Origin: Macrostomum lignano
Lineage: Eukaryota
Direction: 5' to 3'
DNA: 38,615 nt
NCBI GenBank assembly: GCA_002269645.1
Contig: NIVC01003426.1
Location: 1-38,615, forward strand
Positions 7,948 to 38,385 of the stretch are shown in pieces. The first letter of the stretch is position 1. Every line of letters starts with the position of its first letter. The notes beneath the pieces are model-generated. The model searched no databases. It was not told the DNA's origin and saw only the letters and a program-made list of their open reading frames with translations. A program made the translations under genes and the position numbers.

Positions 7948-8037
7948 CTGACAATTAATAAAAAATAAAAAAAGAAAATTTTGTAATGCGTTTGTATTAC
8001 TCAAACATGCAGATTTAAAAATGTGTACAAGTATTTA

Positions 8038-8418: not shown

Positions 8419-8755
8419 GTTTGAAGATAGTATACAACCTCATGTTCATTGATACAGAGAGAATTAGTGAGTCAGTAAGAGAGCAGGTTCTCACTTACAA
8501 CTCTACTATCTTTTACTATTATGAATACCCTATTGTTGCACAGTTTGGGGCACTCGGCTGCCTGTTGCGTTTTTTTGAAAGAAAATATTCTGCTTGTCTC
8601 TACATTTTTAAAAGGCAGAAAATACCGAGATTTCTGCGCGGCCTATTGTTACTCAGTGGGATGTGTCGCACGATAAGTCAGTGTGAGTTGCGATGAGTGT
8701 AGCTGTGCCACTCTTTTAAGCATATTCAATATTGGGTGTGCGATTTTTGTATTTT

Positions 8756-9165
8756 GTTATAGCTGACTGAATATCTAAAGCATTTCCTAGAAATAATGGT
8801 TTACTGAAGGCCATTTTATATGTATAAAATTTATTATCGTTAAATTGGATGACACTTTCATATTGTATATACCTGAAATTGCATTGAATTGACCCGTGAA
8901 TCGAACTTTTCTCATGGTTTTAGAGCTGAAATCGTAAAAATTGCACCTTTTCAGAAATTTTAAAAAAAATCACAAAAAATCGCTGTTTTCAGACCATTTT
9001 CACCTGTTTTTAGTCATTTTACTTATTTTTAGTAATTTTCAAAATGAGTAAAGGCATGAGGGCGAGGACACCCTCCTTTTTAAAAAGTATAAAAATTCTG
9101 AAAAAATCTGTTTTGCAAAATATTCCACAGGCCAATGCCCCCACATGCCCTCACCCTCAACCCCG
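8756..9165 (+). repeat. Dispersed repeat, copy A (copy B at 31715-32120); possibly the 3' region of a piggyBac-like family
   Basis: Shared blocks GTTATAGCTGACTGAATATCTAAAG, CCTGAAATTGCATTGAATT, AAAAAATCGCTGTTTTCAGACCATTTTCACCTGTTTTTAGT. Both copies are preceded by decayed Cys-rich coding-like segments. The piggyBac link is tentative. Confidence 0.8.
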
Positions 9166-14087: not shown

Positions 14088-15438
14088 CAGTCGGTATCAC
14101 CCGCAGAAAGAATCGTGTCTCTAGATTAATCCGCTTTCCAGATATTCGAAGGCGGCGATTCGGGAAAATTCTAATGCATTCAAATGGGCAAATCCGGGAA
14201 AATCAATTAGGAATTGCCAAACTGTATCAGTAGCCTCAGCTTTGGGATTCTACACATCATTAGAGTGTGCCAGTCGGTGTCACCCGCAGAAAGAATCGTG
14301 TCTCTAGATTAATCCGCTTTCCAGATATTCGAAGGCGGCGATTCGGGAAAATTCTAATGCATTCAAATGGGCAAATCCGGGAAAATCAATTAGGAATTGC
14401 CAAACTGTATCAGTAGCCTCAGCTTTGGGATTCTACACATCATTAGAGTGTGCCAGTCGGTATCACCCGCAGAAAGAATCGTGTCTCTAGATTAATCCGC
14501 TTTCCAGATATTCGAAGGCGGCGATTCGGGAAAATTCTAATGCATTCAAATGGGCAAATCCGGGAAAATCAATCAGGAATTGCCAAACTGTATCAGTAGC
14601 CTCAGCTTTGGGATTCTACACATCATTAGAGTGTGCCAGTCGGTATCAGCCGCAGAAAGAATCGTGTCTCTAGATTAATCCGCTTTCCAGATATTCGAAG
14701 GCGGCGATTCGGGAAAATTCTAATGCATTCAAATGGGCAAATCCGGGAAAATCAATCAGGAATTGCCAAACTGTATCAGTAGCCTCAGCTTTGGGATTCT
14801 ACACATCATTAGAGTGTGCCAGTCGGTATCAGCCGCAGAAAGAATCGTGTCTCTAGATTAATCCGCTTTCCAGATATTCGAAGGCGGCGATTCGGGAAAA
14901 TTCTAATGCATTCAAATGGGCAAATCCGGGAAAATCAATCAGGAATTGCCAAACTGTATCAGTAGCCTCAGCTTTGGGATTCTACACATCATTAGAGTGT
15001 GCCAGTCGGTATCAGCCGCAGAAAGAATCGTGTCTCTAGATTAATCCGCTTTCCAGATATTCGAAGGCGGCGATTCGGGAAAATTCTAATGCATTCAAAT
15101 GGGCAAATCCGGGAAAATCAATTAGGAATTGCCAAGCTGTATCAGTAGCCTCAGCTTTGGGATTCTACACATCATTAGAGTGTGCCAGTCGGTATCAGCC
15201 GCAGAAAGAATCGTGTCTCTAGATTAATCCGCTTTCCAGATATTCGAAGGCGGCGATTCCGGAAAATTCTAATGCATTCAAATGGGCAAATCCGGGAAAA
15301 TCAATCAGGAATTGCCAAACTGTATCAGTAGCCTCAGCTTTAGGATTCTACACATCATTAGAGTGTGCCAGTCGGTATCAGCCGCAGAAAGAATCGTGTC
15401 TCTAGATTAATCCGCTTTCCAGATATTCGAAGGCGGCG
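14088..15438. repeat. 183-bp satellite-like tandem array, ~7.4 copies
   Basis: CCGCAGAAAGAATCGTG recurs every 183 bp; copies differ by only a few substitutions. Confidence 0.98.
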
Positions 15439-16604
15439 TATCGGGATGACGTGACGAACAACGAGGACCAGTACTCAATGTTTTAATTGAGAATGAGAAA
15501 TTCTATTTTACAGAAAGGAACGAATGGATGCTCTCTACTGCACTCAGAAGATCACGAAAGCACCCTTACAAAAATAAAGGAAGTGGTTTATATTGCTTTG
15601 AAAGACAGACTTAATGCTGTAATTGGTTAGAAGGATAGGAAATATAGGAAAAATATTAGTGCATGGAGTTTACAGTATACACACACCTTTTGACTGTCAA
15701 CTGTCACCCCACCGTGTCATTCTTTCTCTGTTGCGGTTTGGTGGGGGAGGCTGTCAGTGTTCTCTCAATTGGCCGCGCTTTAACCAATAGGAACAAATAT
15801 TCTATAGAATTCCAGAACGATTCCATGGAATAATCGTCTTTCCGTGAACCCAACTGTATTCTACAACTAATTGAGTAATCGGGTGTGATTTTCCAGTGGG
15901 TTATATTGATGCTTTCAAACGAATACTCTTTAGGACCTTACTGTCAGTAGTAGCTAACTACAACGGGCAACCATATTATACATGTATGAATACGTTTTTC
16001 ACCCGACCATCAAAATCAAAATCAAAATATAAAGTTATTCGGCGCCTTCAGCAAACTGGAAACTAAGCTCATAATTAATAGTACGTGTAATGTAACTTAT
16101 AACAGAAATATCTGACTCATTGTAATTGCCATCAGCTCAGCTATAGCTGCCTGTACGCTCGTACATGTAGCAGAAAAACAGTTTCAGCTTCCGTATCGTC
16201 GTCCAGCGAATTTATTTTTTCATCTTATCTTCGAGCTACATGTACAAAAAGCTTTGCATAATTAATACAAGCGGGAACAGATTAGTTTACCCGATTAACA
16301 GTAAACAGTTTTTCAAAAAATTTCCGGCCAATTCGTCTATTTTGTACAGGTATACAAACATGCGTATGATGCTACTAAAAGTAAATGTGCCGCAAATGTG
16401 CGGTATTTTCCTTCGTTGAATGTCCCACATTGTTCCAACGTTTTTTCAACAGCCCATACGACTATTCACTTTGCCCAAATATCCTTTTCGTTGGACGAAC
16501 GTTTTTTGGCAGCCCGGGAACACCCTCACACAAGATATTTATATATCTTTATATTTATATAATTATATTTATATACTCATCACACACCCACTGGCAACTA
16601 TGAC

Positions 16605-16714
16605 CTGGTGGTAGTAGTAGTATGATATAAGGGGCTGAGTCATCCAGCGAGCTGGCGCGAAATGCGCCCGAGCATTAAGTGTGGCGCAGCCTCTTATATC
16701 ATACTACTACTTAC
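16605..16714 (-). other. 99-bp hairpin element (16613-16711) filling a predicted 110-nt GT-AG intron, copy 1
   Basis: Arms AGTAGTAGTATGATATAAGGGGCTG and its reverse complement match at 24 of 25 positions. Minus strand has AC|GTAAGT at 16714 and ACCACCAG|G at 16605. Confidence 0.7.
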
Positions 16715-17000
16715 GTTTTACTAGATTTCGAATGAGTCTCTCTTTCACAGACAAGTCACTGGTTGGAATCGCATCTAAATCAGCTATCATTTTTTCATCA
16801 GCTATATGCTTCTTTGCTAGAGCTTCTTCTGGATTTAAAGATGTTTTTTTCAGCATCTCTATGAGTCATTGCGGTCTAAATATCTAATCCTGTTCCTAGA
16901 AAAATCTGCTTACTGAAGCCCATTTTTACTGTGATATTTTAGTACAATTATTGTGCCAAGAAGCTAAAAATATCTCTATTTCCTTTTCCGGAATGTAATT
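16707..17000 (-). pseudogene. Polinton/parvovirus-type PLA2-like domain remnant
   Basis: Decayed ELH.G...LD..TAMTH followed by the open stretch KKHIADEKMIADLDAIPTSDLSVKERLIRNLVKRK*, resembling the HD...RH.AD..M...L region of Polinton PLA2X proteins; stops and frameshifts upstream. Confidence 0.45.
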
Positions 17001-17458
17001 CAGTTATATTCTTCAGAAATCTTTGGCATTTTTATAATGAAAAAATTGAAGACGCGTTTTTGTCAATCCAAAGATGGTAAAATGCTACTTTATTCGTATG
17101 AAGTTCTGGCTTGGCCAGCAAAAGATGTTTTTAACTTGCTACTTATGTAAGTAAAATGCTTTGAACGAAATTAAATGTTTCATTTTGACAATTCAGGATT
17201 TTCCTGACAATTGCAGCTAGTGTAGCTAGGACTTTAGAAGCTAGTCCTCCTCATGATCATCCGTGTCTGGGGCCGGCGCCGTGTCCGGGGCCGGCGCCAC
17301 TGTCCGCGGACTTGGACTCCGGGCTCGGCAAACTGCGGAAATAAAGAACTAGCAATCTGAGCAACCCTTCAGGGTGGGCAAATATTAAACATACATTTTA
17401 ACTCTCAAGGCTTGTCGTATTGTTGTCAAGGGTTGCTGCATTGTCGTAACTATCTTCA

Positions 17459-17540
17459 GCAAGCATCCCCCAGTAGACAGCAAGAATTTCCACAGCAGAC
17501 AGCAAGCATTCCCCCCAGCAGACAGCAAGCTTTCCCTGCA
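17459..17540. repeat. ~22-bp minisatellite (AGACAGCAAGC core), ~4 copies
   Basis: Repeated CAGCAAGCAT(T)CCCCCAG(T/C)AGA. Confidence 0.8.
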
Positions 17541-19240
17541 TTCAAGTAGAACTTCTAGGGGGGTAGTCAGGAGGGGGTTGCTACTTTAGTTATATAAGAT
17601 TTAGGGCCTGAACACGCAACTTAAGCTGCTGAAAGATGCAAGCGCTAAATGCAAATTCGAGTAACAGAAAGTCATTCCACACTTAGGAATGAAACGCTGC
17701 ATTCAGAGTTTGGGGGAGTCAAGTTGTTTTTACTCACTTAGATGGAGGATTTCTGTAAAGAAACGACGCACTATATATTTTCAGTCGATGCCTAAGTGTG
17801 CATGTAATGATTGTGCGAAGGATTAGGGGACTACAAGTCAACGCAAGTTTCTAAGTGATGAAGCACACCCTTGACAAGTGAGTTAAGGGGGGATTAAGCG
17901 ATGGCACAAGGTGCATAGAGTACATTACACATGCAACTCCACCCACAGCGCACAAGCCAAGTCACCAAGTCGCCAAGTCACCTCTTATTTTACAGTATAA
18001 GATTTCAATATCAATAAAAATGAACAGAGAAGGTAATCGTCAAGAAGAAACTAACCTCTAGCGCTGTATAATACAGCGTGTTTTCTTCAATGAATGAATC
18101 CATGGAAATCTGAAGAGATAAGTGAGATAAATTCACGTATTCATTGATAAATCATTCATTGATAAATCTATAGGCAAAAACTTATAGACATGGTCGCCAG
18201 TCACTATTAGAGACATGACCACCATGTCAATGAAACTTGCATGGCAGCTGTATCATTAATATTGAATGGGTTCACACGACACTGTGGGTGGCCATGTCTC
18301 TAATATGGGAGCTTATAGGCACGGCTGCCATGCATAATAATCATCAATCACAAATTGGATGTAAAAATAGATTGACTGATTTGTAAAAAGTCAGAGTTTT
18401 TTGTACTTATTTTAAATTAAACTTGTACTTAAGATTGAGTGTTACTTCTATTAAAAATAATTTAATTTATTTTTAGGCTATAGAAGAAAAAATAGCTATA
18501 TGTATATTATGCCTATGAATATACAAAAAGCTATCTTTTTATCAGTGTGCCATTGTGTAGTAACATGCAATTTTATCTAACTTATCTCTGCATTGTTTTC
18601 CAATTAGAAAATAAAAAAAAGTTAGAGCTGCCTCTTTCACCTCATTTTAAAATATGATTTCTTATGGGAATTCGTTTGTAATTTATTGATACACTTATTT
18701 TAGTGAGCACCAAGAGCTAGGCAAAACTTTTTTGCAAAATATAAATTTGTAATCATTTTTGCATAAGAAATTAAATGGAAAAATAAAAACCCATGGTGCT
18801 TAACAAAATATTTGCATTAAATTTTTATAGGCAAAATACATTGACTAAAACAATTTTCTTAATTGCAAGAATTTAATCAATTAATCCATATGATATATTA
18901 TTAGAAAGTATTTTTCCAATAGAATATGTCTTTTTCTACCACTTATTTCTATTCTTTGTTATCTAGGTTATTTTTAAGCTAGAAAAAAGTTTTTTTTCAC
19001 ATTTTTTCATTTGGTCATATTTATATTTATCTCATTGAAGTCCCTACTAACAGCTATGGATATGGATCTTGCATTGCCATTGCCATTAAAATATGGGCAG
19101 TTGTTATTGTTATGGTGACAAGCGTCTAGCGAGACAGTTAACACTTATGGTTATGGTTAACACTTGAAACAATTACCATCTAAGTAAGTACTGAGAAAAG
19201 TACTGAGAGAAAGGATGGGGAAACATACAAGAAAGATTCG

Positions 19241-19326
<86 letters not shown>
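19241..19326. repeat. (GA)n microsatellite
   Basis: GA run of ~86 bp with one interruption. Confidence 0.99.
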
Positions 19327-19328
<2 letters not shown>

Positions 19329-19408
19329 GTGCTGTGACCCTCTAATCTCGGGAACACCCGACTAGGACTCATTATTGAAGTTCATGTACCTGTACTAGAC
19401 TGCTCAGG

Positions 19409-19561
19409 CCATACATAAGACGCTACCAGACATACATAAGACGATACCAGACTAATACATGAGACGCTACCAGACTAATATATAAGACGCTACCAGACTA
19501 ATACATAAGACGCTACCAGACTAATATATAGGACGCTACCAGACTAATACATAAGACGCTA
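19409..19561. repeat. 21-23-bp minisatellite, ~7 copies
   Basis: Unit GACTAATACATAAGACGCTACCA. Confidence 0.95.
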
Positions 19562-21499
19562 TCCGTACGCTACTGAAACCGCTATATTTAAATAAAAATT
19601 CCAAGAAATTACTAAGAAATATTAGTATAGAGGCAAAAAACCTGTCACAACTTGGTGGCATTAGTGGGATATTATCAAGAAAGAAGTCACCCCTACCACA
19701 ACTTTGGTCCCTACCACAACTTTGGTGGCAGCTTTAAGATTAATTTCATAGACAGAAGAATAACGCTTGTTACACTTTTAATTCCAACTAATGCTTGATT
19801 AGAACTTTTGACAATTGACAATATATTCTTAACTTATTAATCTTAGCTTAGGAGTTTTTAAAAAAATTATATGCTTTTAAATGGCACTGCTACTGCTAGA
19901 TTCATAGCTGTTAGAAAATGAACATTTGCAAAATTAAAATAAGAAATTATAAATGAAGCATTGCCAGCCATCATTATAAGATGTTTATACATTAAAGTTA
20001 GGCTTCCATTGCCATTTACACTGTGACAGCTGTTAGAGAACTGGTTCTGGTGCTAGAACTAGTCATTACCAGTGGCTGTATCATATTTAACAGGTTATAA
20101 CTGTTATAACTGAGTATAGCTCATAGGCAATGGCTAGATTCCTAGAGTTCCAGCACCGGAACCCATTTTCTAACGGCTATGGATCTGGCAGTGCCATTAT
20201 TATAGAGATGGAACAGATTTCTTAAAATTATTCTTAGTAGTATTGAATTATATGCTTCTATATGGCACTGCTGGATCCATAACTGCTAGAAAACGGGTTC
20301 CGGTGCCAGAACTCTAGCCATTACCATTGTCCATTACTGATTGAATATAGGCATATGCCTTGTCATGAAAATAACTTTGGCTGATAATTTTTACCAACGT
20401 TAAAACCAATGTTAAAATGTACAAAACATGTGCATGATTCCACATGATGACTCACTCACCCGTCACCCCTCACTCCTTGGTCAGCTACCCCATAATTTTT
20501 GTCGTCTAGTATATAGCCACCCCACTCTTACTATGTACATTTTAACATCAGTTTTAATGTTGGTAAAAACCAATCCGCCAAAGTTATATACATGCGTAGT
20601 CATGCAGCTCAGCAGCTGCAAGCAGAGCTGCAAAGATGGTTATGGCTAGAGTTCCAGCACCATAACTAGTCCCTAACAGCTGTGTAACTGACACTGCTGG
20701 ATCTTCTATCTAGGGTAATATAGCCATAAGAAAACTGGCTACTGCCTATTGGCTTTGCTGCCAGAAGTCTACTCAAGCTAGCCTGAGCCTGTTGCCTTGC
20801 TTTTTTGGAACAAAAAACTTGACAAGGCAACTTTTGTTTTTTATCTTGAACTATATAGTTACTTAGAACTATATTCAAACTTATTTAGTTGCTGCGGGCC
20901 TTTAGGCCACCACAAGTTTTAATGGTGGCCCAAAACTGGCATACATAGTAGGCATTTTTAGAATAGGCAAGAAATAGTAAGTCAGATTCAGATACCAATT
21001 GACACTCTTGTAAAACTTGCAACTTATTCCCTTAACCTTGAAGTTTTACTTTCCTATAATGTTTGACAAAACTGGAGTGGAAGTTATTGTCCGCTTCTAT
21101 GAATCTGTTTTTATTAGGTTCGCTTGTTTCGCTTGTTTTTAGAAATGGCTGTCCAAGTCATGTTGATTAACATTTAAAGATTGGTCCAAATCAAAACTAC
21201 ACAGTATAACAACAATGTACAAAAATAAATTTAGAACGCTATGCGTAGATATGAAATTCAATTAAAAATGTATAGTTGATTTTTTTTATTATAGCCTCTA
21301 ATATACATGTTTTAAGCAAAGTTGTAAATACTACACACAATGTCCACCATGTCAAAATACTATTAGGCGGAAAATAAGAAAGACAAGAAGCATCATAAAA
21401 CATTTCAAGTGAAAAATGGCAAGACAGTTTTAGCAATAATGAAAACAGAAAAACAGTGACACGAACGTGAGCATGTGTATATTTTCTTTTCCTCCTCCT

Positions 21500-22010
21500 T
21501 TTTCATCCGGGCTGGGGACCGGGAATAGCGGAATTAAAAGATTTGACTAAACGCAAGAATCACAAATTTGGTGGCCCTGAGAAGGGCTGTTTTGTCGTTC
21601 AGGGGTCACTCATTTATAGGTCGGTGACCAAGACCTTACGCACACCACGACTGCATAAGTGCAGTGGCAGTGGTCCACTTCTGCAAGCCGCCAGACTGGC
21701 CAGCGTGGCTAGGCTTGGCACTTTGCCAGTTGCGGCACGTTTGGCAGCCAAACGAACTGACCAACGATATTTTGCAAAAACGGTCCGCACTGCGCAGCGT
21801 TGCCAGTCGAAACCGGGCTTAGGCGGCGCGGAGGTAGAACACGAGCTGGCGCTGGAGCTGGCACAGCTGGCCCCTTGCACCATGAAGTTTGCCCCCAAAA
21901 GCAGCCTGGCCCATTGCAGATTGCGTAGAAATCATTGTCTCTTGGACAATGTTTCCTACGGCACGTATTCGCCAGCAACTTTCGGCAGCAGCCTTAATGG
22001 TGCAAGGGGC
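21500..22010 (+). repeat. GC-rich unclassified repeat, copy 1 (partial, rearranged copy at 22885-23120)
   Basis: ~140-bp direct match (GGCTGGGGACCGG...GGTGGCCCTGAGAAGG...GGTCGGTGACC) plus an ~85-bp segment present in opposite orientation in copy 2. Confidence 0.85.
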
Positions 22011-22114
22011 ACCATTCATCTTCTGCCACCTCAGTAGCAGACTGGCGCGACAATAGACAGCCCTGGAATCATTTTGTGAACAGAAATGATAATCCCACAA
22101 AAAATAAAAAACTA

Positions 22115-22190
22115 GCCAACATCTAGCCAACTGCCCACCTAGCCACCCAACTCCCCATCTAGCCACCCAACTCCCCACCTAGCCACCAAC
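22115..22190. repeat. C-rich ~18-bp minisatellite
   Basis: Repeated CTAGCCACCCAACTCCCCA(T/C). Confidence 0.8.
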
Positions 22191-22884
22191 GATCCACCTC
22201 CGCTTATCTCTACTCATCTCCGCTCCAGCCTGAGGTAAAAAATAATAGAAAAACAAGGCTACTGTACATATGCTTTGTGCATGATAAAACAACATCGTTG
22301 GTGCGTGTTTTTTGGATTTGTCATCAACAAGTAATTAGTGATGCCATATTGTATTGCATTTTGTGAGTGGCGCGTCCGCTTACAGTACTCCTTAGTCTTT
22401 AGACTTACATTTTATTTCTATTCCTGCGTGTCGCGCATCTCCTACTTCAAGTAGCGAACTCAGCTTATTTTACTCAGCATGAAAAAATAAATGAGCAAAA
22501 ATATTGTATTTTTAGTAAATTTCTATTGTGTACGTTGCAAACTCGTAATACACGAATACTAAAACTCTTAATTACAAGTTTTGCAATAGTATAGTTTCAG
22601 CTTTGCGTGCCTCTATTTTCTGTGTCCCTCACTAAGGGAGGAGGGGTAGAAGAATGGAGGAGAGAAGGGTAGAATGTAGGCGAGAAGGGGTAGAATGAGG
22701 AGAGAATATTTATTTGCACCTCAATGCACCAATACAGGACCCACACAATTGAAAACAATATTAAATCGAGCAGAAAACACGCAGCTTTATGCACTCGCAG
22801 TATCGTTATATTCAGCTGTTCCAATGCAGCTCCTAGCAGGCCAAGCCCGAACCCTTTCCCTTCCCCAGCCCGAACCTTTCTCTC

Positions 22885-23120
22885 CTCTTTTTTCATTCCG
22901 GGGGCTGGGGACCGGCAATGGCGGAGTTAAAAGATTTGACTAGCGCAAGCATCAATAATTTGGTGGCCCTGAGAAGGCCGCTTTAGCGTTCAAGGGTCAC
23001 TCATTCTATAGGTCGGTGACCCAAAACCTATAGGTTGCTGGCCAATACGTGCCGTAGGAAACATTGTCCAAGAGACAATGATTTCTACGCAATCTACAAT
23101 GTGCCAGGCTGCTTTTTAGT
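22885..23120 (+). repeat. GC-rich unclassified repeat, copy 2 (internal deletion plus inversion)
   Basis: 22885-23030 matches 21500-21640; 23036-23118 is the reverse complement of ~21897-21979. Confidence 0.85.
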
Positions 23121-25339
23121 GGTCACCTCAGAAGTCAACATCCGTACGGAACTCCAAGTCGCCCATGGACATCATCACACCGGCCTTCTCGAAGTTCATG
23201 AAGTCAAACGGATTTCCCATAAAAACTCACGAGTGCTTTTGCTTTCTTCCAAAAACTTTGCGAACTCTGTCTCAAAGCGCAAAAATGCCATCTCTTCAAC
23301 CTTTCGGCGACTTTGCAACCAAGCAGCTGAAAATGGATGAAAACCAATTTTTCATTCAGACTGATAATATATGAAAAAATAATAAATATGAACATACAAT
23401 ATCACAATGACATACGAATTAATTCAAACAAATAAAATACTAACTGATCGACATGATGCGTGCGAAGTTCATAGTGTCAGCGACGTAATTCAGAAAATTA
23501 TCGATTATCATGCACCATCTCCTTTACTTGAAGTCCAAATCTGCGGAATGCAGCCAAATGCGCTCAAAGCTTTCGCCATCTATCAGGCCCACAGACTCGG
23601 TGGCACGAATGCCGAACAACAACTGACAAAGAAGAACGTGACCATAAACGTGCAACACCGGCAAGACAAAAGTTAATATTGGATCGCAGAATCAACCAGC
23701 CAGTTTGCAACTTATGTCGTAAGATACGATTATTGAAACGTGGGGAGGAATATCGCGCAGCATCTGCTGAACCATGCACTCGCTGTAGTTAAGGCTGTAA
23801 AACAAGCAAAATAACTGGTGTTCAAAAATCATATAGGATAACTAGTACTCGTAAGCACTGAAAGGAATTACCGCTCGCCAGGAGTAGTCACTAGTATTTA
23901 CTAGTCAAAATAATCCCGACGCCTGTTCATCAATTTCTAAAGTTAATAAAAATTTTAAAAAATTATCGTTTGTATGATTTAAGAAGAATAACAAATTTCT
24001 AGTCAGATAGCCCAACATTTTTAGTTAATACAAACAATAACACCACGATGACACAGATAATAAATATTTTCTATGGCATAAAACTATACAAAATTACTGC
24101 GCGAATACTAACTACTACGACGTTAAAATATAATTCTCATAGACATGACTAGAGAGATAGACAAGATCTAGACAAAAATCTATGCAGTAAACGAAATAAG
24201 GGCAAAGCCCATGTACTGACATAAAGTACAGTGGAATTGCTATCGCATGTAGATGTAGCAACCTTAACTTAATTTAATTAGTGTACAGTGCCCTACGATT
24301 CTACGAGTTGATTAATATTTTAATTTTGAGTTCAACGAATGTGAAATTTTAAATTTCCGCGTGAATTTTTATTTTGTTTCAATTTTTAGTTTGTTTTAAC
24401 TTCATGCGAAAATTCTAAAATTATTTGAATTTGAATAAAATTAGTCTTTTTCGCATAATATTTACAAACGGATGCAGTATATTACCTCCAAGGACAAATC
24501 CAAGTACAAAGGCGATTAATTTTATGCCTTTATCAAACATCTAGAAATTAGAAAACTGGCACTTCGTGAATTAGGAAATTGGCCTGTCTATCAATTATAA
24601 ATATCTCGCTTGGTACCTTACTTTGCTAAAAAAACATTCAAAACGAAAATGGGTGACTAACTAGTCCTCGTTTCTTGCGCCTGTACTATTTTTCTCTGAC
24701 CAAATTTCCACTAAATTTAAAAACAGAAGACTATAGATTCGTAGCATATTGCAATTCTAAGCTAAGCTAGACATAAAAGAAAGAAAATGATTACAATGCA
24801 ATTTAGGACCAACCGGCCACGTTTGCTTGCCAAAGACAAAGCCGTCTTCATCCAGTATACATTAATATACGAGAAATGAGTCCCGGATGTGCAGCGTTTT
24901 TAGCTTGCTTCATTGCTAGTACAGTGCTAGTACGCTAGTGCGCACTAGCGTTCCACACTCACCCCACCCCACCCCACCCCTCTCCGCTCGTGGGCTGGCC
25001 CTCTCTAAGGGAGCCCATCCCACCGTGGGCTGGGTCCCGTTAACGGGCTATTTTTAGCGTGGGATGGGCTCCGCTATCGGCGGGCCGTTAGGTGCGTGGA
25101 CTCACTATCTAGTCAGGTATTTTTTGTTAAGTGGATTGTCTGTCTAGTCCACGGCCGTTAGGTGGCGGAGGAACGAAAGAGCAGAAGGGGGAAGGGTCCA
25201 GCGAGCGCACAAGGGGAGGAGTGCAGCTATCTAGAATTGCATACACTGAGCAATTGTACGCGGCAGGCCAGGCAACAACAGTACAGGCAAGCGCCAAATT
25301 TGGCGGCTTCCACTAACTAACCCTAGGCTAGAAAAACTT

Positions 25340-26315
25340 CCTAATTTTTATGTTAATGAGCCTCATTATGATGACTCGATTGCGCCATATTGTGCAACTT
25401 CTTAGCGCCAAGGAAGGCTGCTTAGAGTACATGGAGGCAGCAGAACAGTTCCTATTACAGATGGCGGAGTAGCCTAGTAAGGGGTTGTAGCCTAGTAAGG
25501 GGTTGTAGCCTAGTAAGGGGTTGTAGCCTAGTAAGGGGTTGTAGCCTAGTAAGGGGTTGTAGCCTAGTAAGGGGTTGTAGCCTAGTGGTTAGGGCGTCGG
25601 ACTCACGACTTGAAGGTCGGGGGTTCGATTCCCGATCCCTCTGCAACAATTTGTGTCCTTGAGCAAGACACTTAACTCTGCGTTGTTTCAGTTTACCCAG
25701 CTGTAAAATGGGTACCAGCATTAGCTGGGGTAATTGAGGGTGTGTGTGGCGACCCCCCAGTCCTTGGACTGAACAGCCGTACGCAGCCTTCAGATGCGCC
25801 GCGCAATAGCTGCGGCTGAGCTGTCGGTTGCACATCTGCCCATTGGGCAGGTGTAATCAATTATTATAAAATTATTATTATTACAGATACTAGCAGCGTA
25901 CAACAGCGCCTAAGATGTGACTGCGGCCCTATGCTTGCAGCAGAAAGCTGCGGCCACATCACTGCTATATAAAAGATACATGTTGGTGTGAATTTTACTT
26001 ACATTCCACTTTCGAACTGCATGAGGTGGATTGTGGCCATGAGCAGCTTCAAGACAGGTCTTACACACCTGAAGGTGACAGCTTTCACAACGAAATAAGC
26101 CCTCTGATTCCTAACAGATTAAGCAATTGCCTTTGATAAAAAAGTAAGCTGCCACACCATCAGCCAGCTGTTCACTGAGCAATGCCCATTTCTCCTTTTC
26201 ACATCGGGCATCATAACGGCTAGGGCCATTGGGTTCTTCAAGCAGCTAAAAATCTCCCACTGTACCTTCACCTTCTACAGCCTAGGCTCCTGAAGAGTCC
26301 CCGAAACGACTTTGC
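25340..26315 (-). pseudogene. Degenerate KDZ (Kyakuja-Dileera-Zisupton)-type transposase N-terminal segment, CxC3/B-box-like cysteine cluster
   Basis: Exon 26315-26003 reads ...RYDARCEKEKWALLSEQLADGVAAYFFIKGNCLIC*ESEGLFRCESCHLQVCKTCLEAAHGHNPPHAVRKWN|GTAAGT. The next exon (...CCTLLVSVIGTVLLPPC...) is continuous once the SINE and one TSD copy are removed. Several in-frame stops. Confidence 0.5.
25463..25878 (+). mobile_element. tRNA-derived CORE-type SINE with tandemly amplified head
   Basis: A box TAGTGGTTAGG, B box GGTTCGATTCC; central GTGTCCTTGAGCAAGACACTTAAC...CAGTTTACCCAGCTGTAAAATGGG resembles the MIR/CORE consensus; (ATT)n tail; perfect 10-bp TSD TATTACAGAT at 25453-25462 and 25879-25888. 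Confidence 0.88.
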
Positions 26316-26542
26316 CTGAAGCATGACATTAAATCATGTTGCATAAAAATATTGTCAGCAGTAAAAAGGGTTGCAAGCTGTAAAGCAGTTCCAATTAGCA
26401 CTAATACTGGCAAATTTTATTGTCTAGATTGTCTAGGCATAATGCTGCTATGTAATTTGTGGGCAAGTATCATTACTTTATATAAAAGTTTATTAGTATA
26501 AACAAGCTCAAACAAAATAATACATTTGAAGTAATAACACAG

Positions 26543-27532
26543 TTATAACACTCCACGGTCGGCTCGAACAGTTGCTGTCAGCAGTGTGCTGCGTTCGTAC
26601 AGAAAAGTCGCAAGCCGTACTGAAGCAAACCACTTGTCGACGAAAAGGTGATAGCCGAAACCGAGCAGGTCCTTGCAAAGGTGCACTACGATTTTCTCGC
26701 TTAGAGACAGCTGGTCACAACCGAGGTCGTCGCCAAAATGAGAGTTCTCTTCAGCAGTCGAATGTACTAGAAAGTTATACAGGTAGCCAGATGCAGACTC
26801 ACAGGCGCAGTACATTTTAATTCCAACTCTGGCTCTCTTCGATGGGATGTACTGCCTAAACTGAAGGCGCCCCTTGTACAGAATCAGGGACTCGTCGACG
26901 CTGACCTGCTGCTCCGGCTGGTACACGTTCGCGCAGAGCTGCTGAGCCAGACGGAGCAGCGGCCGAATCTTGTGCAGTGGGTCGTTCGAGGCGGGTGCTC
27001 GTGCATCGTAGAAACGAAGGAAGGCCAGCAGCTGCTTGAATCGGTCACGGGTCAAGCCATTGGGCGATTGAAAAAACGGAGTACTGTGAATGACACTGGT
27101 GCTCCAGTAATCATGCAGTTCCGGCTTCCGTGAGATGCCCATGAACAGGTACATACCCAACAGCTTGGATATCTCACTGCGGTTTGTGTCCTTCCATGAC
27201 TTCAGCAAGCTCGAAACATCTCCATCATGTGTCGCCTGCTCATACTCAGCCCAAGCTTTTGCGTTTGTCCACTCCACGATCTTATCCAGCAGCTCATCGG
27301 TTAGAAACAGTCGTAGAAAATATTGGATGTCTTCACGGTCTTCGGGAAGGACAATGCTGGGGTTTACACCCGAAATTCCAGTGAAACTGGGGCCGTCTTC
27401 AACAATGTCTTCGCCTGGCTCCACAAACTGCCAATCGTCTTCTTCTTCGCTGATAGTGACCGACTCAGACGACTCGGAGTTCTCCGCTATTCCAGCGTCA
27501 CTTTCGGAGTCGGAAGTCAACAGAATATCCAT
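26543..27532 (-). pseudogene. piggyBac PGBD4-like transposase (DDE_Tnp_1_7), truncated after the second catalytic Asp
   Basis: Acidic N-terminus; FLTDELLDKIVEWTN; MGISRKPELHDYWS; RDRFKQLLAFLRF; KIRPLL; VSVDESLILYKGR; QYIPSKRARVGIKMY; GYHLFVDKWF; stops at RADRGVL* before the GGVD motif. Confidence 0.92.
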
Positions 27533-27826
27533 ATTTGGATTGATTTGAATTACATGAATAGAATTGTACAGAATTTGGCACAGCCCTTAATATACTAAAA
27601 CTGGACTGTCTATGGCCAGTCTTGTACAGTTTTGATAAGCGTGTGTGCAACCCATTCCAAATGTACATTCTCCTTCAACCCTAGATTAGACCAGCGATGG
27701 CTGGCTTATCGGCAGGAGTGGCAATGCAATTCAGTTCACTGAAAACTTGAAATAGTCTATGGTCAGCTCTGCTGACCATGCCGGCAGGAACGGAGCTTTC
27801 TATTTAGGAATTCAGGCTTGAAAAGG
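26543..27826 (-). mobile_element. piggyBac transposon, 5' end present, 3' truncated
   Basis: TTAA at 27827-27830 followed on the minus strand by CCTTTTCAAGCC; transposase ORF downstream; no second TIR found. Confidence 0.8.
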
Positions 27827-29429
27827 TTAAAGACCTTTGCTATTGCCAGAAAGGGACAATTAGAATTTTCAATCCTGTTGTCTCCAATAAAATAGTACGT
27901 ATCTTAAAATAACATGCTTTCCTTTCTGAATTGTAGAACCAATTTCAAAATAGTTGCACAAAACAACTCCATCCTAAACAGGGATCTTATGCCAAAATAG
28001 CACTTTGGCATCTCAAAATCACAAATGGCACCTTGATTTTGGAGTTCAGGTGCCAAATAACACCTTAAAATTGTGTTTCAATGTACCACTTACACCTCCT
28101 AGTTTGTCAAGCTGCCTCGGCACTTCAACTTAAAGCTGAGGGGGATAGAGAAGGACAAGAGGAAATAATAGCTACAGGGGCATTATTAGGAATATAATCG
28201 TTAATAGCAGGGAAACATTAAGGGGCAAAGAATGAAAAAGGTGCCAACTGCCAGGAAGGGATAGAGAGCAAAGGGAAGATAATAGTCTAAGGAAAAAAGA
28301 GGGAAACCATAGAGCAAGGTAATAGGATTGGCCACAGGGGCAAAGGGAGGGTATAGAAGAAGGTAGAGATGATGGGTAATGGCGCCAGGTAGCCACCTTG
28401 CTAGATCACCTAATGACTACAATAGGGTACCATGCCATGTGGCTAAAATAATTTAGAAAGCATGCCAAGTGTTTATCCTAATTTTTTATCAATATAGGAT
28501 AAAATGTTTGCAAATGTTACTTAATTCAAGTAATATATAAAATTAAGTACCCTATAATAGATCATAATGCGCTTCAGCTACCTTGCATTCGCATTTTAGT
28601 TAAAGTTAGTGGATGCCCTTCCACCGGGTGCCCTTCACAATGCAAAGCATGATAAAATGACACAATCAACACTGGCTCACCTGCTCCAAGCCATGCTGTA
28701 GAATACCACTAGTGGTGGCTCAGGTTGTGAGTTCGTTGCTGCATCCGTGAAGACGATCGACATTATGAGTTAATACAGATAATGATGCGTAATATAAGAT
28801 GCAGTGCAGTGGCTATTGGCTAATGGATTAAGTATTGACTCGTGCAGTGCAGTCGTGCAGTGGCTTGATAAAGACAGTATCAGGACTTGACCCGCAAATA
28901 ATGAAAAGGTTATTGTACATTTATCGTTTTGTTCAGATATTTCAACACAGAAATCGATTGTGAATCACGTAAATTAACATGGCGACATATCCCAAAATAA
29001 ATACGAAAGAAATAAAGGATCAATCACAATTGAACATAACTCCAAATTGACTAAAGTGATAAATCAGCGACAATTCTAATTCAATCGAAAATCTAAGTCT
29101 CATTCATTCATCTAAACTTGAAAGCAATCGAAATAACCGACACGGAAAACGCGAAATTCTGCAGTCAATCGCATGAATGCGACTTGTAACCATAGACTAT
29201 TGAATTGCTAGTATGCCTTTGCTTGGCACGCATTTTTTAATTCAGTTCATAGGCTCTACCCATGCGCGACTATTTCTGTATCAGCGAGCCAAATATAAAC
29301 GGGGGACGACCCCAGACAGAATACAAATGACCTAGCCATCGACCAATACACAGCAGCGAAAACCAACCCCATTTCACAGGCCAATCGGCGATTATAACTG
29401 ATACTAAAATTAGCAGCAAAGGTTGTTTC

Positions 29430-30320
29430 TAAACTCTACATTTTAAGAACAAAAATGAAAAGGAAAATACCAGTGGCCTCTTACATCTTCGGCCCAGCGC
29501 AGTTGGTTCAAAATACCTATGGCCAGCGCACAAATTCTCTACCCACCGTTCCAGTCGGTTATGGTTCGAACTCGACCAATAATAGAGGTAAAGGAAACAA
29601 CTTTGCAAAGATGGCTCTCGTATTAACAGTAACAACAGTAACAAACCAGCAAACATAGCGGGAAAGTTTCATTCAAATTTCAATAGCATTCGTCAGAATC
29701 AAGACCGAGTCTGCGTTTTGCAGCCAGAAAGTGTCTATGGCCCGATTCCGACCCATCCGACTGAAACGGAGAGTGACAAATATCTTTACCGTCTTGAAGA
29801 GGTTAAGTCTCGAGCATTTTCTCTTGTCGGAAGCCTTCTTAGCTCTTTGTAGCGTATGTAGTGCTGCCCACCAGTTCCTTCAGGTCTCAGCCTTCGGTGA
29901 GGTGAGCTTCCCGTCGTAACAAAAGAAATAAGTCAACGAATTCAGCACAACGTGCAGATTTGCAGCTTAACGTACAGGGCGTCTCGTCAGCAGTACCTGT
30001 CGGGCTTGGTTGGTGGATGGGAGGGCTGCGTTAGCCTCTCGTAGGCTCGGGGTTGGCTTTAGTGGGTCTCAGTTAGACCAATAGTAGAGGGTTAGTTGTA
30101 CGCAGCACGGGCGTTCAGTTCTGACAGACACTTAGAGAACGAGTGACTCAGACTCGGAAACTTAGACTCTCAGAAACTAGCGAACAAGAAACTCCTTGAC
30201 GGAAAAAAGGGGGAGGGGGTCCTTATTTATAGCACGGTATTCTCCTCTGCCCGAGAACGCACAAAACCTCGTGACTTGTTACCTCGTTGCCTATCAATTA
30301 GTGCCCATTTATCAACGTGC
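29430..30320 (-). mobile_element. Possible decayed retroelement 5' region with a gag-like remnant
   Basis: TATAAATA at ~30225-30232 (minus); downstream YDGKLTSPKAET*RNWWAAL...SDKRK..L and HRYFEP resemble Gypsy gag N-terminal motifs; heavily disrupted. Confidence 0.25.
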
Positions 30321-30494
30321 ACAAGATATACTCTGAATGACTTTAAATATGGTGGGCATTTGCAATTTGTGTGTTTTAATATTTCTGCTTTATATTCATC
30401 ATAGGCTTTATCAATTTCTTCAATTAGTCGAGCCTTTCGACTAGGGTCTCTTGTTTGAGAAAAGGTATAATAGAATAATAGTATTTATTATAAT

Positions 30495-31066
30495 TTATAA
30501 TAGTATTTTTTGTAGCAGAGCATTTCGAACATTTGGGTTATCAGCTTCCATTTTTTCTAGGAAAATTAAACAATTACAATTGGTTTTGGGAGCAGCTTCA
30601 GCTTTTCCTCCAAGGTGTCGAACGGTCGATTGTCTATCCCTTCGCCGTTGGGATTGAGATTTTTTCCCTTGCTTAGCTTCCAAGAGGCATTTGCATGTGA
30701 AGCAACTGCTACGGTGAGCTTGTTGAAGGTGTGGATTAGATCAGCTTTGTTCAGTTCCGATATGTCGAGACTTGAGTCTTCAGCATACTCCTGGTAGTCA
30801 GTCATTACAGCTATTCCAGTTCTCTTAATAGTGTCCAAATTAATTTTCAAATTAGTCATGAATGTTGCCTTCTCGCGTGGCTTCTTCTCATCAGTTGACC
30901 TTTCTTATGGAGTTATTTTGTCGGATATCGTTGTTAGCACTCGAAGAGGATCCTTGTCGGCATCGCCAAGTTCATTGATTGCAATTATTACACTTGTGTC
31001 ATCTGCCAACTGAACCTCCTTGAGATTTTTTATCTTAGATTCGATAATTTTCTTACCACCAGCCAT
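30495..31066 (-). pseudogene. Intronless unknown ORF with one internal stop and a probable C-terminal frameshift
   Basis: ATG at 31066 (MAGGKKIIESKIKNLKEVQL...) is in frame with the track ORF 30566-30859 across a TAA at 30905-30907; the overlapping frame ends IFLEKMEADNPNVRNALLQKILL*. Confidence 0.4.
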
Positions 31067-31099
31067 GTCGAAATCAAGAATAGTTACTGATGATGTGCC

Positions 31100-32120
31100 A
31101 GTTAGAGTCTATGCTATGAAGCTGCAACGATGAATCTAAATACCCTTCAAATTCTGAGAGATGAAAAAGAAAGGTGGGTTGGACAAATAAGGGTTCGTCT
31201 TTGCGAAGGGAAGCTTTTGAACGTAACGACCACTACCATATATGGTATTATTTCTCCTCTCCATGAATGGGCTAGTATGGAATATCATACTACAGGTGAG
31301 GCAGGGACGCAAGAAGTTTTTAGAAAGAAAGATTGCGAAAACATTCGCACACTCAAAAGTGACTCATCCCTTCATATAAGTCTATTACTAGGGTTTTTGG
31401 ATTTACAAAGGTGTTTTTCTCTTACGTCTCTGGAGTACTGCGGTGTGAGAGCAGGTGTGAGGGAGGCATTGTTCTCCTGAGCAAGAGCAAGTTTCTTTTT
31501 TGTTGAGTCGGATAGAGAGTTAAGGCACGCTGGCTGATGCAAAGTACCGGTATGTGATGGGCATAATTTTTATTGAAGAAAGGGTAAGCTGCCAAGGAGT
31601 TCTGACACATCATCAGCATTGTGAGTCAGCTGTTTGCTTGCGAAAGAGAGAAAATTATATGATGTTATATGAAATTCTCCTGGTTGTTTTCCAGTGGAGA
31701 TGGGTGGTAGTTTTGTTATAGCTGACTGAATATCTAAAGAAGAACCTAGAAATAATGTTTACTGAAGGTCATTTTTATAATGAAAAGAGTAAGCAATCTT
31801 AAATTTAATGCCAATTTCAATTTGTATTCGCCTGAAATTGCATTGAATTAACCCCCAAACCACACATTTCTCGTGGTTTTACTCACGAGATCTCGAAAAT
31901 GACACTTTTTCCAAATATTTAAAAACGACAAAAAAATCGCTGTTTTCAGACCATTTTCACCTGTTTTTAGTGATTTTCAAATGAGTAAGGGCATGAGGGT
32001 CAGGGCACCCCCTTTTTTAAGTGTAAAAAATTCTGAAAATCGGTGTTCTGCGAAATATACCATATGCCAATGCCCCTCCATGGGCATTGAGGGTGAGGAG
32101 CCAATGCTCCTCACCCTCTG
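31100..32120 (+). repeat. Decayed piggyBac-like C-terminus followed by dispersed repeat copy B (31715-32120)
   Basis: Fragments KKKGGLDK (GGVD-like), VCDGHN and CESAVCLRKRENY (CRD-like) occur in shifting frames; the repeat matches 8756-9165. Confidence 0.5.
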
Positions 32121-32163
32121 CCCCCACGCCATGTCTATACCCGCCTGTTGTAACTCTGACCTC

Positions 32164-32270
32164 CTGGTTGTAGTAGTATAATAAAAGGGGATGAGCCATC
32201 TTGTGAGTGGCGCGAACTGCGCCCGAACACTTGATGTGGCCCAGCTCCATTTCACTATACTACTACTCAC
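32164..32270 (-). other. 99-bp hairpin element (32169-32267) filling a predicted 107-nt GT-AG intron, copy 2
   Basis: Same architecture as copy 1; inner core matches copy 1 at 27 of 33 nt; AC|GTGAGT at 32270 and AACCAG|G at 32164. Confidence 0.65.
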
Positions 32271-32776
32271 GTGTTCTAACTGCAGATGTACTTGTCCACG
32301 AAGACAACCAAATCTTCTGTTTGCAACGATTCCGACGCATATCTTTAAAAGCATCTTCCACATCCTTAATTGTTTGAGCGATTGCCGTCTTTCCAAAATT
32401 TGAAAGCTTGACGGAGACGACTTCAACATCTGACTGCGTTATCAGTAGCCCTCTCTTCCCAAAGTTGTACTTTATCTTTACTATGCCCCGATGTCTTCCT
32501 TGACTTTCTGTTTCTTGTCCAACATCAACTTCGACAATTACGTGTCAGCTTGTCATATAATAAACAACACTTTTTAAAAATAGTTTGTATAAGTCGATGC
32601 CACCCGAATCAATTTTCCAGTGATTAAATTGCAGTCCCTAGGACAGCTCTATCATTTCAACTAGTGGTAAAAAATCTAGAGACAGATTGGTAGCGAAGTC
32701 TGCTCCGAAAACTCTAAACTCAGCCCGCTGGGAGGCTAGATGCACTGGCACTGTGCACAACAGTGCGCAACACAAC

Positions 32777-37817: not shown

Positions 37818-38385
37818 GCCATGGAAGGGGTAGCCTGGGAGGAGTAGCCTGGAAGGGCTGCCTGGGAAGGGTAGAGTAGGAGGGGAGCCTGAGGGGCTGT
37901 CTGGGGGGATGCCTAGGAGAGGTAGAGTGGCAGGGGTAGCCTGGGAGGGTTAGCCTAGGAGGGTTGCCTAGGAGAGGTAGCCTGGGAAGGGTATAGTGGG
38001 AGGGGTAAACTCGACGGGATAGCTTTGGATAGCTCCCTGGGAAGGGTATCCTGGGAGTGTTAGCCTGGGAGGGCTGCCTGGGAAGGGTAGCCAGGAAGGA
38101 TTGCCTGGAGAGGTAGCCTAGAAAGGGTAGCCTGGGAAGGGTAGCCTGGTAAGGGTAGCCTGGGAAGGGTAGCCTGGTAAGGGTAGCCTGGGAAGGGTAG
38201 CCTGGGAGGGATAGAATGGGAGGAAGCCTGATGGGTTTAATAGAAGGGTAGCCATTAAGTGGTAGCCTAGTAGGGCTGTCTGGGAAGGGTAGCAGCCTAA
38301 GAGAGGTTGAATGGGAAGGGTAGCCTGGGAAGGCTGTCTGGGAGGGGTAGAGTAGGAGGGGTAGCCTAGAGGGAAGGCTGCCTTG
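37818..38385. repeat. G-rich ~14-nt minisatellite
   Basis: Unit GGGTAGCCTGGGAA with many degenerate copies. Confidence 0.92.

What the first reader, a model, noticed from the sequence alone, without database searches (positions are those of the whole stretch)
16605..32270. Two diverged 99-bp hairpin elements that each exactly fill a GT-AG intron (introner-, mirtron- or mini-Polinton-like)
Seen: 16613-16711 and 32169-32267 are both 99 bp, with ~25-nt inverted arms of the AGTAGTAGTAT type and a conserved GC-rich core (27/33 identical) containing a GCGC-GAA(A/C)-TGCGC sub-hairpin. Arm positions 12 (G to A) and 16 (T to A) are changed in both arms of copy 2, i.e. compensatory. On the minus strand both start inside a canonical donor (AC|GTAAGT; AC|GTGAGT, the AGT being the first arm bases) and end 5-8 nt before CCAG|G. 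Known: introners are TIR elements that carry or co-opt splice sites; mirtrons are hairpin introns; Polintons end in AGTAGT. Inference: a small self-removing element family or conserved structured intron RNA, which I cannot assign to a known family.
Basis: partly seen in the sequence, partly recalled or inferred. Interest (0 to 1): 0.72.

Follow-up and report, generated by a model that had tools for sequence, protein, structure and literature searches.

The report
Hairpin end of a flatworm repeat
The two 99-base hairpins are real and related, but they are the end module of a larger repeated element of Macrostomum flatworm genomes, and nothing shows that they are introns that cut themselves out.

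Summary
Observation confirmed. Both 99-bp hairpins are at the stated coordinates. They fold far better than shuffles (z -8.5 and -7.5), share a GC-rich core, and show compensatory arm changes.

- Homology between the copies runs about 10 nt past the proposed CCAG acceptor.
- A third copy, found with a covariance model in Macrostomum lignano DNA (locus L074), shows the hairpin is the terminal module of a larger repeat: module A (hairpin plus a ~70-nt tail), usually joined to a ~525-bp module B. So the supposed downstream exon is repeat sequence.
- That third copy has a perfect 25-bp stem but a 2-nt insertion that spoils the donor (GTACAA), and it lies outside any called gene.
- The supposed upstream exons have no credible homologues.
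- There is no convincing target-site duplication, no Rfam match, no Polinton gene, and no copy in the viral or metagenome collections.

Across three copies all 96 stem cells pair, and 4 pairs change on both sides.

Best reading: the terminal stem-loop of an unclassified non-autonomous interspersed repeat, conserved because the element's propagation needs it. The GT...AG resemblance follows from AGT-rich and ACT-rich arms. Splicing or small-RNA production is not excluded; RNA-seq is needed.

The parts
16613..16711 (-). Copy c1 of the 99-nt hairpin. The outer stem is about 25 bp with one A.C mismatch on the minus strand. The inner GGCGC/GCGCC stem has a 5-nt loop.
   Evidence: (I6).
16525..16719 (-). 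Module A, copy c1: ACGT, then the hairpin, then a ~90-nt tail (ACCACCAGGTCATAGTT..., an AT-rich stretch, ...GTGAGGGTG). It is homologous to L074 14133-14302 at 87.7%. The lower bound is approximate: blastn gives 16550, and the alignment extends it to about 16525. Module B is absent here.
32169..32267 (-). Copy c2 of the hairpin. The paired part is 32170-32266. It has two G.U pairs on the minus strand, which would be A.C mismatches on the plus strand.
31594..32275 (-). Full composite element A+B, copy c2. It is 72% identical to L074 14141-14839 over 721 aligned columns. It lacks the AT-rich tail of module A and carries an extra palindrome at 32082-32123.
8752..9164 (-). Module B only, copy c3. 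It is 90% identical to L074 14315-14726 and 75% identical to 31711-32082. It has no hairpin module and lacks the last ~113 nt of B.
   Evidence: (D8, D12, D14, D18).
16865..16926 (-). A 62-bp fragment of module B, 146 nt from c1, 76-77% identical to the other copies.
   Evidence: (D10).
16598..16714 (-). Largest candidate intron of c1. The donor G is at 16714 (AC|GTAAGT). Possible acceptors end at 16605 (CCAG|G, 110 nt) or 16598 (ATAG|TT, 117 nt). It is sequence-plausible only; there is no transcript evidence.
   Evidence: M. lignano splice motifs GT[G/A]AG and CAG are taken from PMC8629364.
32154..32270 (-). Largest candidate intron of c2. The donor G is at 32270 (AC|GTGAGT). Possible acceptors end at 32164 (107 nt), 32161 (110 nt) or 32154 (117 nt). 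It is sequence-plausible only.

Best explanation
The hairpin is the terminal stem-loop of an unclassified, non-coding interspersed repeat (a non-autonomous transposable element) of Macrostomum flatworm genomes. The window comes from M. lignano or a close relative.

Anatomy, read on the window's minus strand:
- Module A starts at a fixed boundary, ACGT. The 99-nt hairpin follows, then a ~70-90-nt tail.
- In two of three cases a ~525-bp module B follows directly. The join is a CCCTCA-like simple repeat.
- Fragments exist too: A alone (c1) and B alone (c3).

Shown:
- The module structure.
- The fixed boundary at the hairpin end in all three copies.
- Conservation of pairing through compensatory changes.
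- Stems better conserved than loops.

Inferred:
- The stem-loop is the cis-acting structure that the mobilising enzyme reads, on RNA or single-stranded DNA, at the element's end. Only lineages that kept the stem went on copying.
- Read on the plus strand, the hairpin sits at the 3' end and c1 looks like a 5'-truncated copy. That pattern is typical of stem-loop-dependent retroposition, but the transposon class is not established.
- The donor-like GTRAGT and the pyrimidine-rich tract with AG are by-products of arms built from AGT and ACT triplets.
For: - Self-blast: homology is 125 bp, not 99 bp, and the acceptor-side flank is significantly similar.
- The covariance model built from c1 and c2 finds a third copy in M. 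lignano, L074 14130-14259, at 131.6 bits.
- blastn: window 16550-16717 matches L074 14302-14133 (87.7%), 8752-9164 matches 14726-14315 (90%), and 31594-32267 matches 14839-14141 (72%). The four-way alignment shows separable modules A and B.
- Pair counts on three copies: 96/96 cells paired, 4 pairs changed on both sides, and only 5 of 500 shuffles reach that.
- c1 versus c2 identity is 86% in paired columns and 62% in unpaired ones.
- The L074 copy has a perfect 25-bp stem (z -7.9 and -9.1) but a non-consensus donor, and it lies in no called gene.
- Source taxon: the SET ORF is 57% identical to an M. lignano protein, which is the only hit. Several window repeats are 72-90% identical to M. lignano DNA.
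- The surroundings are transposon-rich: a Ty3/gypsy pol and a piggyBac transposase.
Against: - Only three copies were seen. A further 94 kb of M. lignano DNA held none, so copy number and the true ends are poorly defined.
- No convincing target-site duplication, no terminal inverted repeat for the whole element, no poly-A or microsatellite tail, and no autonomous partner. The class is therefore unknown, and the 'recognition structure' role is inference.
- By parsimony, the consensus donor GTRAGT shared by c1 and the most diverged copy c2 is ancestral to the family. The chance explanation does not fully account for that.
- c2 keeps full pairing despite 24% divergence. That could also mean selection on individual genomic copies.
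- Compensatory changes in a palindrome can arise without selection, by templated correction between the arms.
Confidence: 0.6

Rival explanations
1. Transposon-borne hairpin intron (introner-like or symmetrical-intron-like). The element carries a consensus donor at its very end. The hairpin brings it next to an internal acceptor, so that 107-117 nt are spliced out of host or element transcripts.
For: - AC|GTAAGT and AC|GTGAGT match the M. lignano donor motif GT[G/A]AG, and CAG acceptors follow a CT-rich arm.
- The donor-like motif is shared by the two most diverged copies.
- Open frames of 92 and about 50 codons run into the donor on the minus strand.
- The 117-nt variant is a multiple of three in both copies.
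Against: - The repeat extends 70-600 nt beyond every candidate acceptor.
- The L074 copy has GTACAA and lies in no called gene.
- The 'exons' have no credible homologues.
- After the candidate splice the frames stop within 10-17 codons or run into repeat sequence.
- No target-site duplication creates a splice site.
- Flatworms do not appear in the text of the introner survey read, PMC9860276.
Confidence: 0.1
2. Small-RNA precursor. The long, nearly perfect hairpin is transcribed, alone or within the element, and is diced into siRNAs or miRNA-like RNAs (hairpin RNA, transposon-derived miRNA, or a 3'-tailed mirtron if it is spliced). This can coexist with the transposon reading.
For: - A stem of 25 or more base pairs with strongly negative z-scores in all copies.
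- Pairing is kept by compensatory and G.U changes.
- Weak, sub-threshold resemblance to miRNA precursor models only.
Against: - No Rfam family reaches threshold.
- The hairpin is longer than a typical animal pre-miRNA.
- The loop and core are also conserved, which is unusual for miRNA precursors.
- G.U evidence points to different strands in different copies.
- No small-RNA data were available.
Confidence: 0.12
3. Neutral palindrome. The hairpin is an old foldback or MITE-like insertion nested in a larger repeat, or just a quasi-palindrome. It has no role of its own. The arms stay complementary through templated correction between them during replication.
For: - Both strands fold about equally well, and which strand folds better differs between copies. 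That fits a DNA-level palindrome.
- Only three copies were seen, so compensatory events are few: 4 pairs.
Against: - The hairpin end coincides with the boundary of the repeat in all three copies.
- There is no target-site duplication around the hairpin itself.
- The asymmetric core and its small GC hairpin are conserved in one orientation.
Confidence: 0.15
4. A miniature derivative of a Polinton/Maverick or another virus-like element, with the hairpin arms as its terminal repeats.
For: None from tools.
Against: - No polymerase B, capsid, packaging ATPase or protease domain in any ORF of 80 aa or more. The only integrase belongs to a Ty3/gypsy pol.
- No related hairpin in 2.9 million viral contigs; the matches found are chance.
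- The inverted repeat is not terminal on one side of the repeat unit.
Confidence: 0.01

Closest known systems
Introners (intron-generating transposons; Gozashti et al. 2022, PMC9860276; PMC12130899)
   Same: A short, non-coding, repeated element with a consensus donor at one end and AG acceptors after a pyrimidine-rich stretch. Many introner families have inverted repeats.
   Different: - Introners are defined by copies that are introns of annotated genes, with unrelated exon flanks. Here the repeat continues 70-600 nt past the acceptor.
- One of three copies lacks the donor.
- No gene context is shown and no target-site duplication is seen.
- In animals that survey found introners in only two groups, and flatworms are not mentioned in its text.
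Internally symmetrical sister introns and stwintrons of Hypoxylaceae fungi (Fekete et al. 2021, PMC8469720)
   Same: Proliferated sequences with 45-55-nt terminal inverted repeats that can form a long double-stranded RNA, and no flanking duplications.
   Different: Those are fungal introns verified by cDNA at new positions in protein-coding genes. Here the host is an animal, there is no transcript evidence, and the hairpin is one module of a longer repeat.
MITEs and foldback elements
   Same: Small, non-coding, interspersed and hairpin-forming, in a transposon-rich region.
   Different: No target-site duplication around the hairpin. Homology extends beyond the inverted repeat on one side only. 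The core is asymmetric and kept in one orientation.
Stem-loop-dependent LINE/SINE 3' ends ('stringent' retroposons; from my own knowledge of the field, not tested)
   Same: A conserved stem-loop at one fixed end, a copy truncated from the other end (c1), and composite modular structure.
   Different: No poly-A or microsatellite tail, no demonstrable target-site duplication, and no partner LINE that shares the tail was found.
Mirtrons (3'-tailed)
   Same: The hairpin begins 3 nt after a consensus donor and ends 5-15 nt before an AG.
   Different: The hairpin is 99 nt with about 45 stacked pairs, longer than usual. There is no small-RNA evidence, and the donor is not conserved in the third copy.

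Membership tests
Introner | Copies are spliceosomal introns of genes (GT...AG, removed from transcripts) | not testable with these tools
   No RNA-seq was available. The sequence motifs are present in c1 and c2, but the donor is spoiled in L074.
Introner | Similarity between copies is confined to the intron, and the flanking exons are unrelated | tested here: not met
   Homology extends 10 nt (c1/c2), about 70 nt (c1/L074) and about 600 nt (c2/L074) beyond the acceptor.
Introner | Copies sit in protein-coding genes | tested here: inconclusive
   - The upstream ORFs have no credible homologue.
- The L074 copy is in no called gene.
- The empty-site join of c2 is frame-dependent.
Mirtron | The hairpin is bounded by splice sites and yields a ~22-nt duplex | not testable with these tools
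   No small-RNA or splice data. The geometry is compatible only with a 3'-tailed form.
MITE | Terminal inverted repeats at both ends of the repeated unit | tested here: not met
   The repeat unit extends beyond the inverted repeat on one side. The whole A+B element has no terminal inverted repeats.
MITE | Target-site duplication | tested here: not met
   There are no direct repeats at the hairpin edges. At the element edges the best is a 7-mer in L074 (shuffle p about 0.06), and the others are at chance.
Polinton/Maverick | Protein-primed polymerase B, integrase, capsid and packaging genes between long terminal inverted repeats | tested here: not met
   No such domains in 28 ORFs of 80 aa or more. 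The only integrase is part of a Ty3/gypsy pol. No related sequence in the viral contigs.
Stem-loop-dependent SINE / LINE tail | Fixed 3' end with a stem-loop, variable 5' truncation, flanking duplications, and a partner LINE with the same tail | tested here: inconclusive
   The fixed end and one truncated copy are seen. Duplications are not demonstrable. No partner was found in 197 kb.
Known RNA families (Rfam 15) | Score at or above a family's gathering threshold | tested here: not met
   The only hit is tRNA-Val, elsewhere in the window. Nothing meaningful at E up to 10 on c1 and c2, or up to 1 on the L074 element.

The most novel reading that the evidence does not exclude
The element family carries a working intron cassette. 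A consensus donor sits at the transposon's extreme end, and a covarying 99-nt hairpin brings it next to an internal acceptor. Insertions into transcribed DNA of a flatworm would then be partly spliced out, and the excised hairpin could also feed a small-RNA pathway. This would be an introner-like system in a bilaterian group where the survey read here mentions none.
Probability: 0.08. Interest if true: 0.7.

Novelty: new member of a known kind. Interest (0 to 1): 0.25.

Why it matters
As it stands, this adds one unclassified repeat family with a well-conserved terminal stem-loop to the poorly described repeat content of Macrostomum genomes. It also shows that arms built from AGT and ACT triplets can mimic a donor and a polypyrimidine tract. 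A conserved, covarying structure at a fixed transposon end is a useful handle for finding the enzyme or partner element that copies it. If transcript data showed splicing, it would become a rare animal case of transposon-made introns.

Tried and rejected
- Public collections. Arm and core patterns in the viral contigs gave 7 and 24 loci, all chance matches without a hairpin. Two metagenome scans gave 0 and 40 loci; the 40 are chance matches in GC-rich sequence, and none has the second arm.
- Literature search for the literal sequences: nothing.
- Exact look-ups of five window ORFs in the contig index: none on record.
- Coding test of the 'exons'. There is no Pfam match and no homologue in the word-indexed search. 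The one HMMER hit (E 7e-7, seven stretches) is a tandem EF-hand and ankyrin protein. I treat it as a summed repeat artefact.
- Known structured RNAs. Rfam returned nothing for the hairpin or the element, and I saw no snoRNA boxes by eye. The M. lignano spliced-leader sequence printed in PMC8629364 is absent from the window. No conserved exon lies upstream of the donor, so this is not a spliced-leader RNA gene.
- Further copies in the window: the covariance model with filters off finds only c1 and c2.
- Empty site: c3 is not an empty-site paralogue of c2, because homology does not resume after the hairpin.
- Virus-derived terminal hairpin (single-stranded DNA virus end, or the panhandle of a segmented RNA virus): considered, but no viral domain is in any ORF of 80 aa or more, and copy-to-copy homology ends 17 nt from the hairpin.
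- Other transposon classes. LTR, Helitron and piggyBac-type ends were checked by eye on the three copies. None fits.
Full report
**1. The observation.** The two sequences are where the finding says.
- c1 is 16613-16711. c2 is 32169-32267, but its outermost position is an A.A mismatch, so the paired part is 32170-32266.
- Folded as minus-strand RNA they give -52.5 and -49.1 kcal/mol (z -8.5 and -7.5). None of 200 dinucleotide shuffles folds as well.
- The core pattern TCGGGCGCANTTCGCGCCA and the two-arm pattern each occur exactly twice in the window, against about 0 expected.
- RNAalifold on the pair gives 35 pairs, none broken. Three more change on one side and still pair.

**2. First correction: the repeat is longer than the hairpin.**
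- Self-blast gives 16596-16719 versus 32152-32275, 125 bp at 77.6%.
- The 17 nt on the low-coordinate side (minus strand: ACCAssAGGTCAkAGTT) are significantly similar, with 0 of 300 shuffles as good. On the other side only about 4-8 nt (AACACGT-like) are shared.
- Homology therefore runs about 10 nt past the proposed CCAG|G acceptor.
- In an ungapped register both copies also have AG|GTCA (110-nt intron) and kAG|TT (117-nt intron).
- 'Exactly fills an intron' is thus one of three equally arbitrary choices.

**3. Where the window comes from.**
- The window is animal-like and transposon-rich. It holds a Ty3/gypsy pol region, a truncated piggyBac transposase, a SET-domain ORF, a tRNA-Val and many tandem repeats.
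- The SET ORF has a single hit at E below 1e-10, a Macrostomum lignano protein at 57% identity. The piggyBac hits include M. lignano at 50%.
- I fetched eight M. lignano loci, 158 kb in all. Several window repeats match them at 72-90% nucleotide identity.
- The source is M. lignano or a close relative.

**4. A third copy, and what it shows.** A covariance model built from c1 and c2 finds only those two in the window. It finds a strong third copy in L074 at 14130-14259, scoring 131.6 bits.

blastn and a four-way alignment show a modular repeat.
- Module A is ACGT, the hairpin, and a tail of about 70-90 nt. It spans L074 14133-14302 and, in c1, 16719 down to about 16525, at 87.7% identity.
- Module B is about 525 bp. 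It spans L074 14315-14839. c3 (9164 down to 8752) is B alone at 90% identity.
- c2 (32275 down to 31594) is A+B at 72%.
- A 62-bp piece of B lies at 16865-16926.
- The A/B join is a CCCTCA-like simple repeat.

Two consequences follow. The sequence downstream of every candidate acceptor is part of the element, not a host exon. The hairpin end coincides with the element boundary in all three copies.

**5. The intron reading against the third copy.**
- L074 has a perfect 25-bp outer stem (z -7.9 and -9.1).
- Its 5' flank reads ACGTACAAGT. That is a 2-nt insertion relative to ACGTRAGT, and it turns the donor into GTACAA. The M. lignano donor motif is GT[G/A]AG (PMC8629364).
- No gene is called there in the annotated assembly.
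- By parsimony the donor-like motif is ancestral, because c1 and the most diverged copy c2 share it. It cannot simply be dismissed, but the best-preserved copy does not keep it.

**6. Are the flanks exons?**
- Upstream of c2 a 92-codon frame is open, and upstream of c1 about 50 codons.
- Neither has a Pfam match.
- The c2 peptide has no homologue in the word-indexed search. In the full HMMER search it has one hit, a tandem EF-hand protein matched in seven stretches, which I regard as spurious.
- After any of the candidate splices the frames end within 10-17 codons or run into module B.
- Joining the flanks of the whole c2 element gives a continuing frame in only one of three registers.
- Gene context is therefore unproven.

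**7. The hairpin is under some constraint.**
- On three copies, 96 of 96 cells form standard pairs and 4 pairs change on both sides. Only 5 of 500 column shuffles reach this, and slid registers drop to 23-58% pairing.
- Between c1 and c2, paired columns are 86% identical and unpaired ones 62%.
- Which strand folds better differs between copies. c2 folds better on the minus strand; c1 and L074 fold better on the other. The acting strand, or a DNA-level palindrome, cannot be decided.
- With three sequences these numbers are suggestive, not proof. Templated correction between the arms of a palindrome could produce double changes without selection.

**8. What class of element?**
- No target-site duplication is demonstrable. 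L074 has a 7-mer with shuffle p about 0.06, c1 a 6-mer with p about 0.26, c2 is at chance and c3 has none.
- I saw no terminal inverted repeats for A+B, no poly-A, no LTR-type ends and no Helitron-type end by eye.
- No Rfam family matches the hairpin or the whole element.
- No Polinton or other viral gene is in the window.
- Read on the plus strand, the hairpin is 3'-terminal and c1 is a 5'-truncated copy. This resembles retroposons whose reverse transcriptase recognises a 3' stem-loop. That is inference from one truncated copy.

**9. Verdict.** The most likely explanation (0.6) is a terminal stem-loop module of an unclassified non-autonomous interspersed repeat of Macrostomum. The stem would be conserved because propagation of the element depends on it. 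The GT...AG resemblance follows from arms built of AGT and ACT triplets.

The rivals are:
- a neutral or nested palindrome (0.15);
- a small-RNA-producing hairpin (0.12, compatible with the transposon reading);
- a transposon-borne hairpin intron (0.1);
- a Polinton derivative (0.01).

Introners are reported in very few animal groups, and the survey text read here does not mention flatworms (PMC9860276). The novel reading would therefore matter, but the present evidence leans against it.

**10. Limits.**
- Only three copies were available.
- No eukaryotic genome-wide search, RNA-seq or small-RNA data could be reached.

Noticed in passing
window 3144-6439 (+): Ty3/gypsy-type retrotransposon coding region with zinc knuckle, aspartic protease, reverse transcriptase, RNase H and integrase domains. 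It reads as two overlapping ORFs, so the frame changes at least once. LTRs were not looked for.
   Followed up: partly
window 26543-27532 (-): piggyBac-type transposase ORF of 329 aa. It is truncated relative to its ~560-aa relatives. The best hits are 62% (unnamed JGI contig) and 50% (M. lignano).
   Followed up: partly
window 7189-8004 (-): SET-domain ORF. Its only strong hit is an M. lignano hypothetical protein (57%), which also matches at 69% at the DNA level in L072. This gave the taxon.
   Followed up: partly
window 14088-15485: Tandem array of a 183-bp unit: seven overlapping 300-nt register copies, six at 98-100% identity to the reference copy and the last at 87%. A single unit of the same repeat (86%) lies 3.4 kb from the SET gene in M. 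lignano locus L072 (15386-15562).
   Followed up: partly
window 25451-25882: tRNA-Val (CAC) at 25570-25644, directly preceded by an 18-bp tandem repeat. The region 25574-25882 is 75% identical to L075 9600-9879, so it may be a tRNA-derived SINE rather than a working tRNA gene.
   Followed up: no
window 21897-23116: 83-nt inverted repeats, 96% complementary, 1054 nt apart. This is a candidate terminal-inverted-repeat DNA transposon or foldback element. Its ORFs have no Pfam match.
   Followed up: no
window 20142-20666: Cluster of nested inverted repeats (56-nt arms at 86%, 36-nt arms at 92%, and others). It looks like stacked MITE-like insertions.
   Followed up: no
L074 14310-14430; window 32082-32123: Module B begins with its own hairpin (GAGGGTGAGGGCATG ... 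CATGCCCTCAC). It scores below threshold on plant miRNA models. In c2 the same region carries an extra 42-nt palindrome. The composite element therefore has two consecutive hairpins.
   Followed up: partly
window 9335-9358: Short palindrome CATACTACTAGCAGTAGTGAG. It shares a 10-mer with the c1 arm and lies about 190 nt from the end of the hairpin-less copy c3. It may be a remnant or chance.
   Followed up: no
window 35429-35878 and 37819-38381: A 15-bp tandem repeat with open frames on both strands (alanine-, leucine- and arginine-rich on the minus strand), and a 14-bp GGTAGCCTGGGAAG-like minisatellite that fills a 312-aa ORF. Both are low-complexity and are probably not genes.
   Followed up: no
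window 16437-16515 and 9183-9295: Recurrent AACGTTTTTT / CAACGTTG motifs next to element ends in c1 and c3. ACGT also abuts the hairpin end in all three copies. This may be a target preference or another small repeat.
   Followed up: partly
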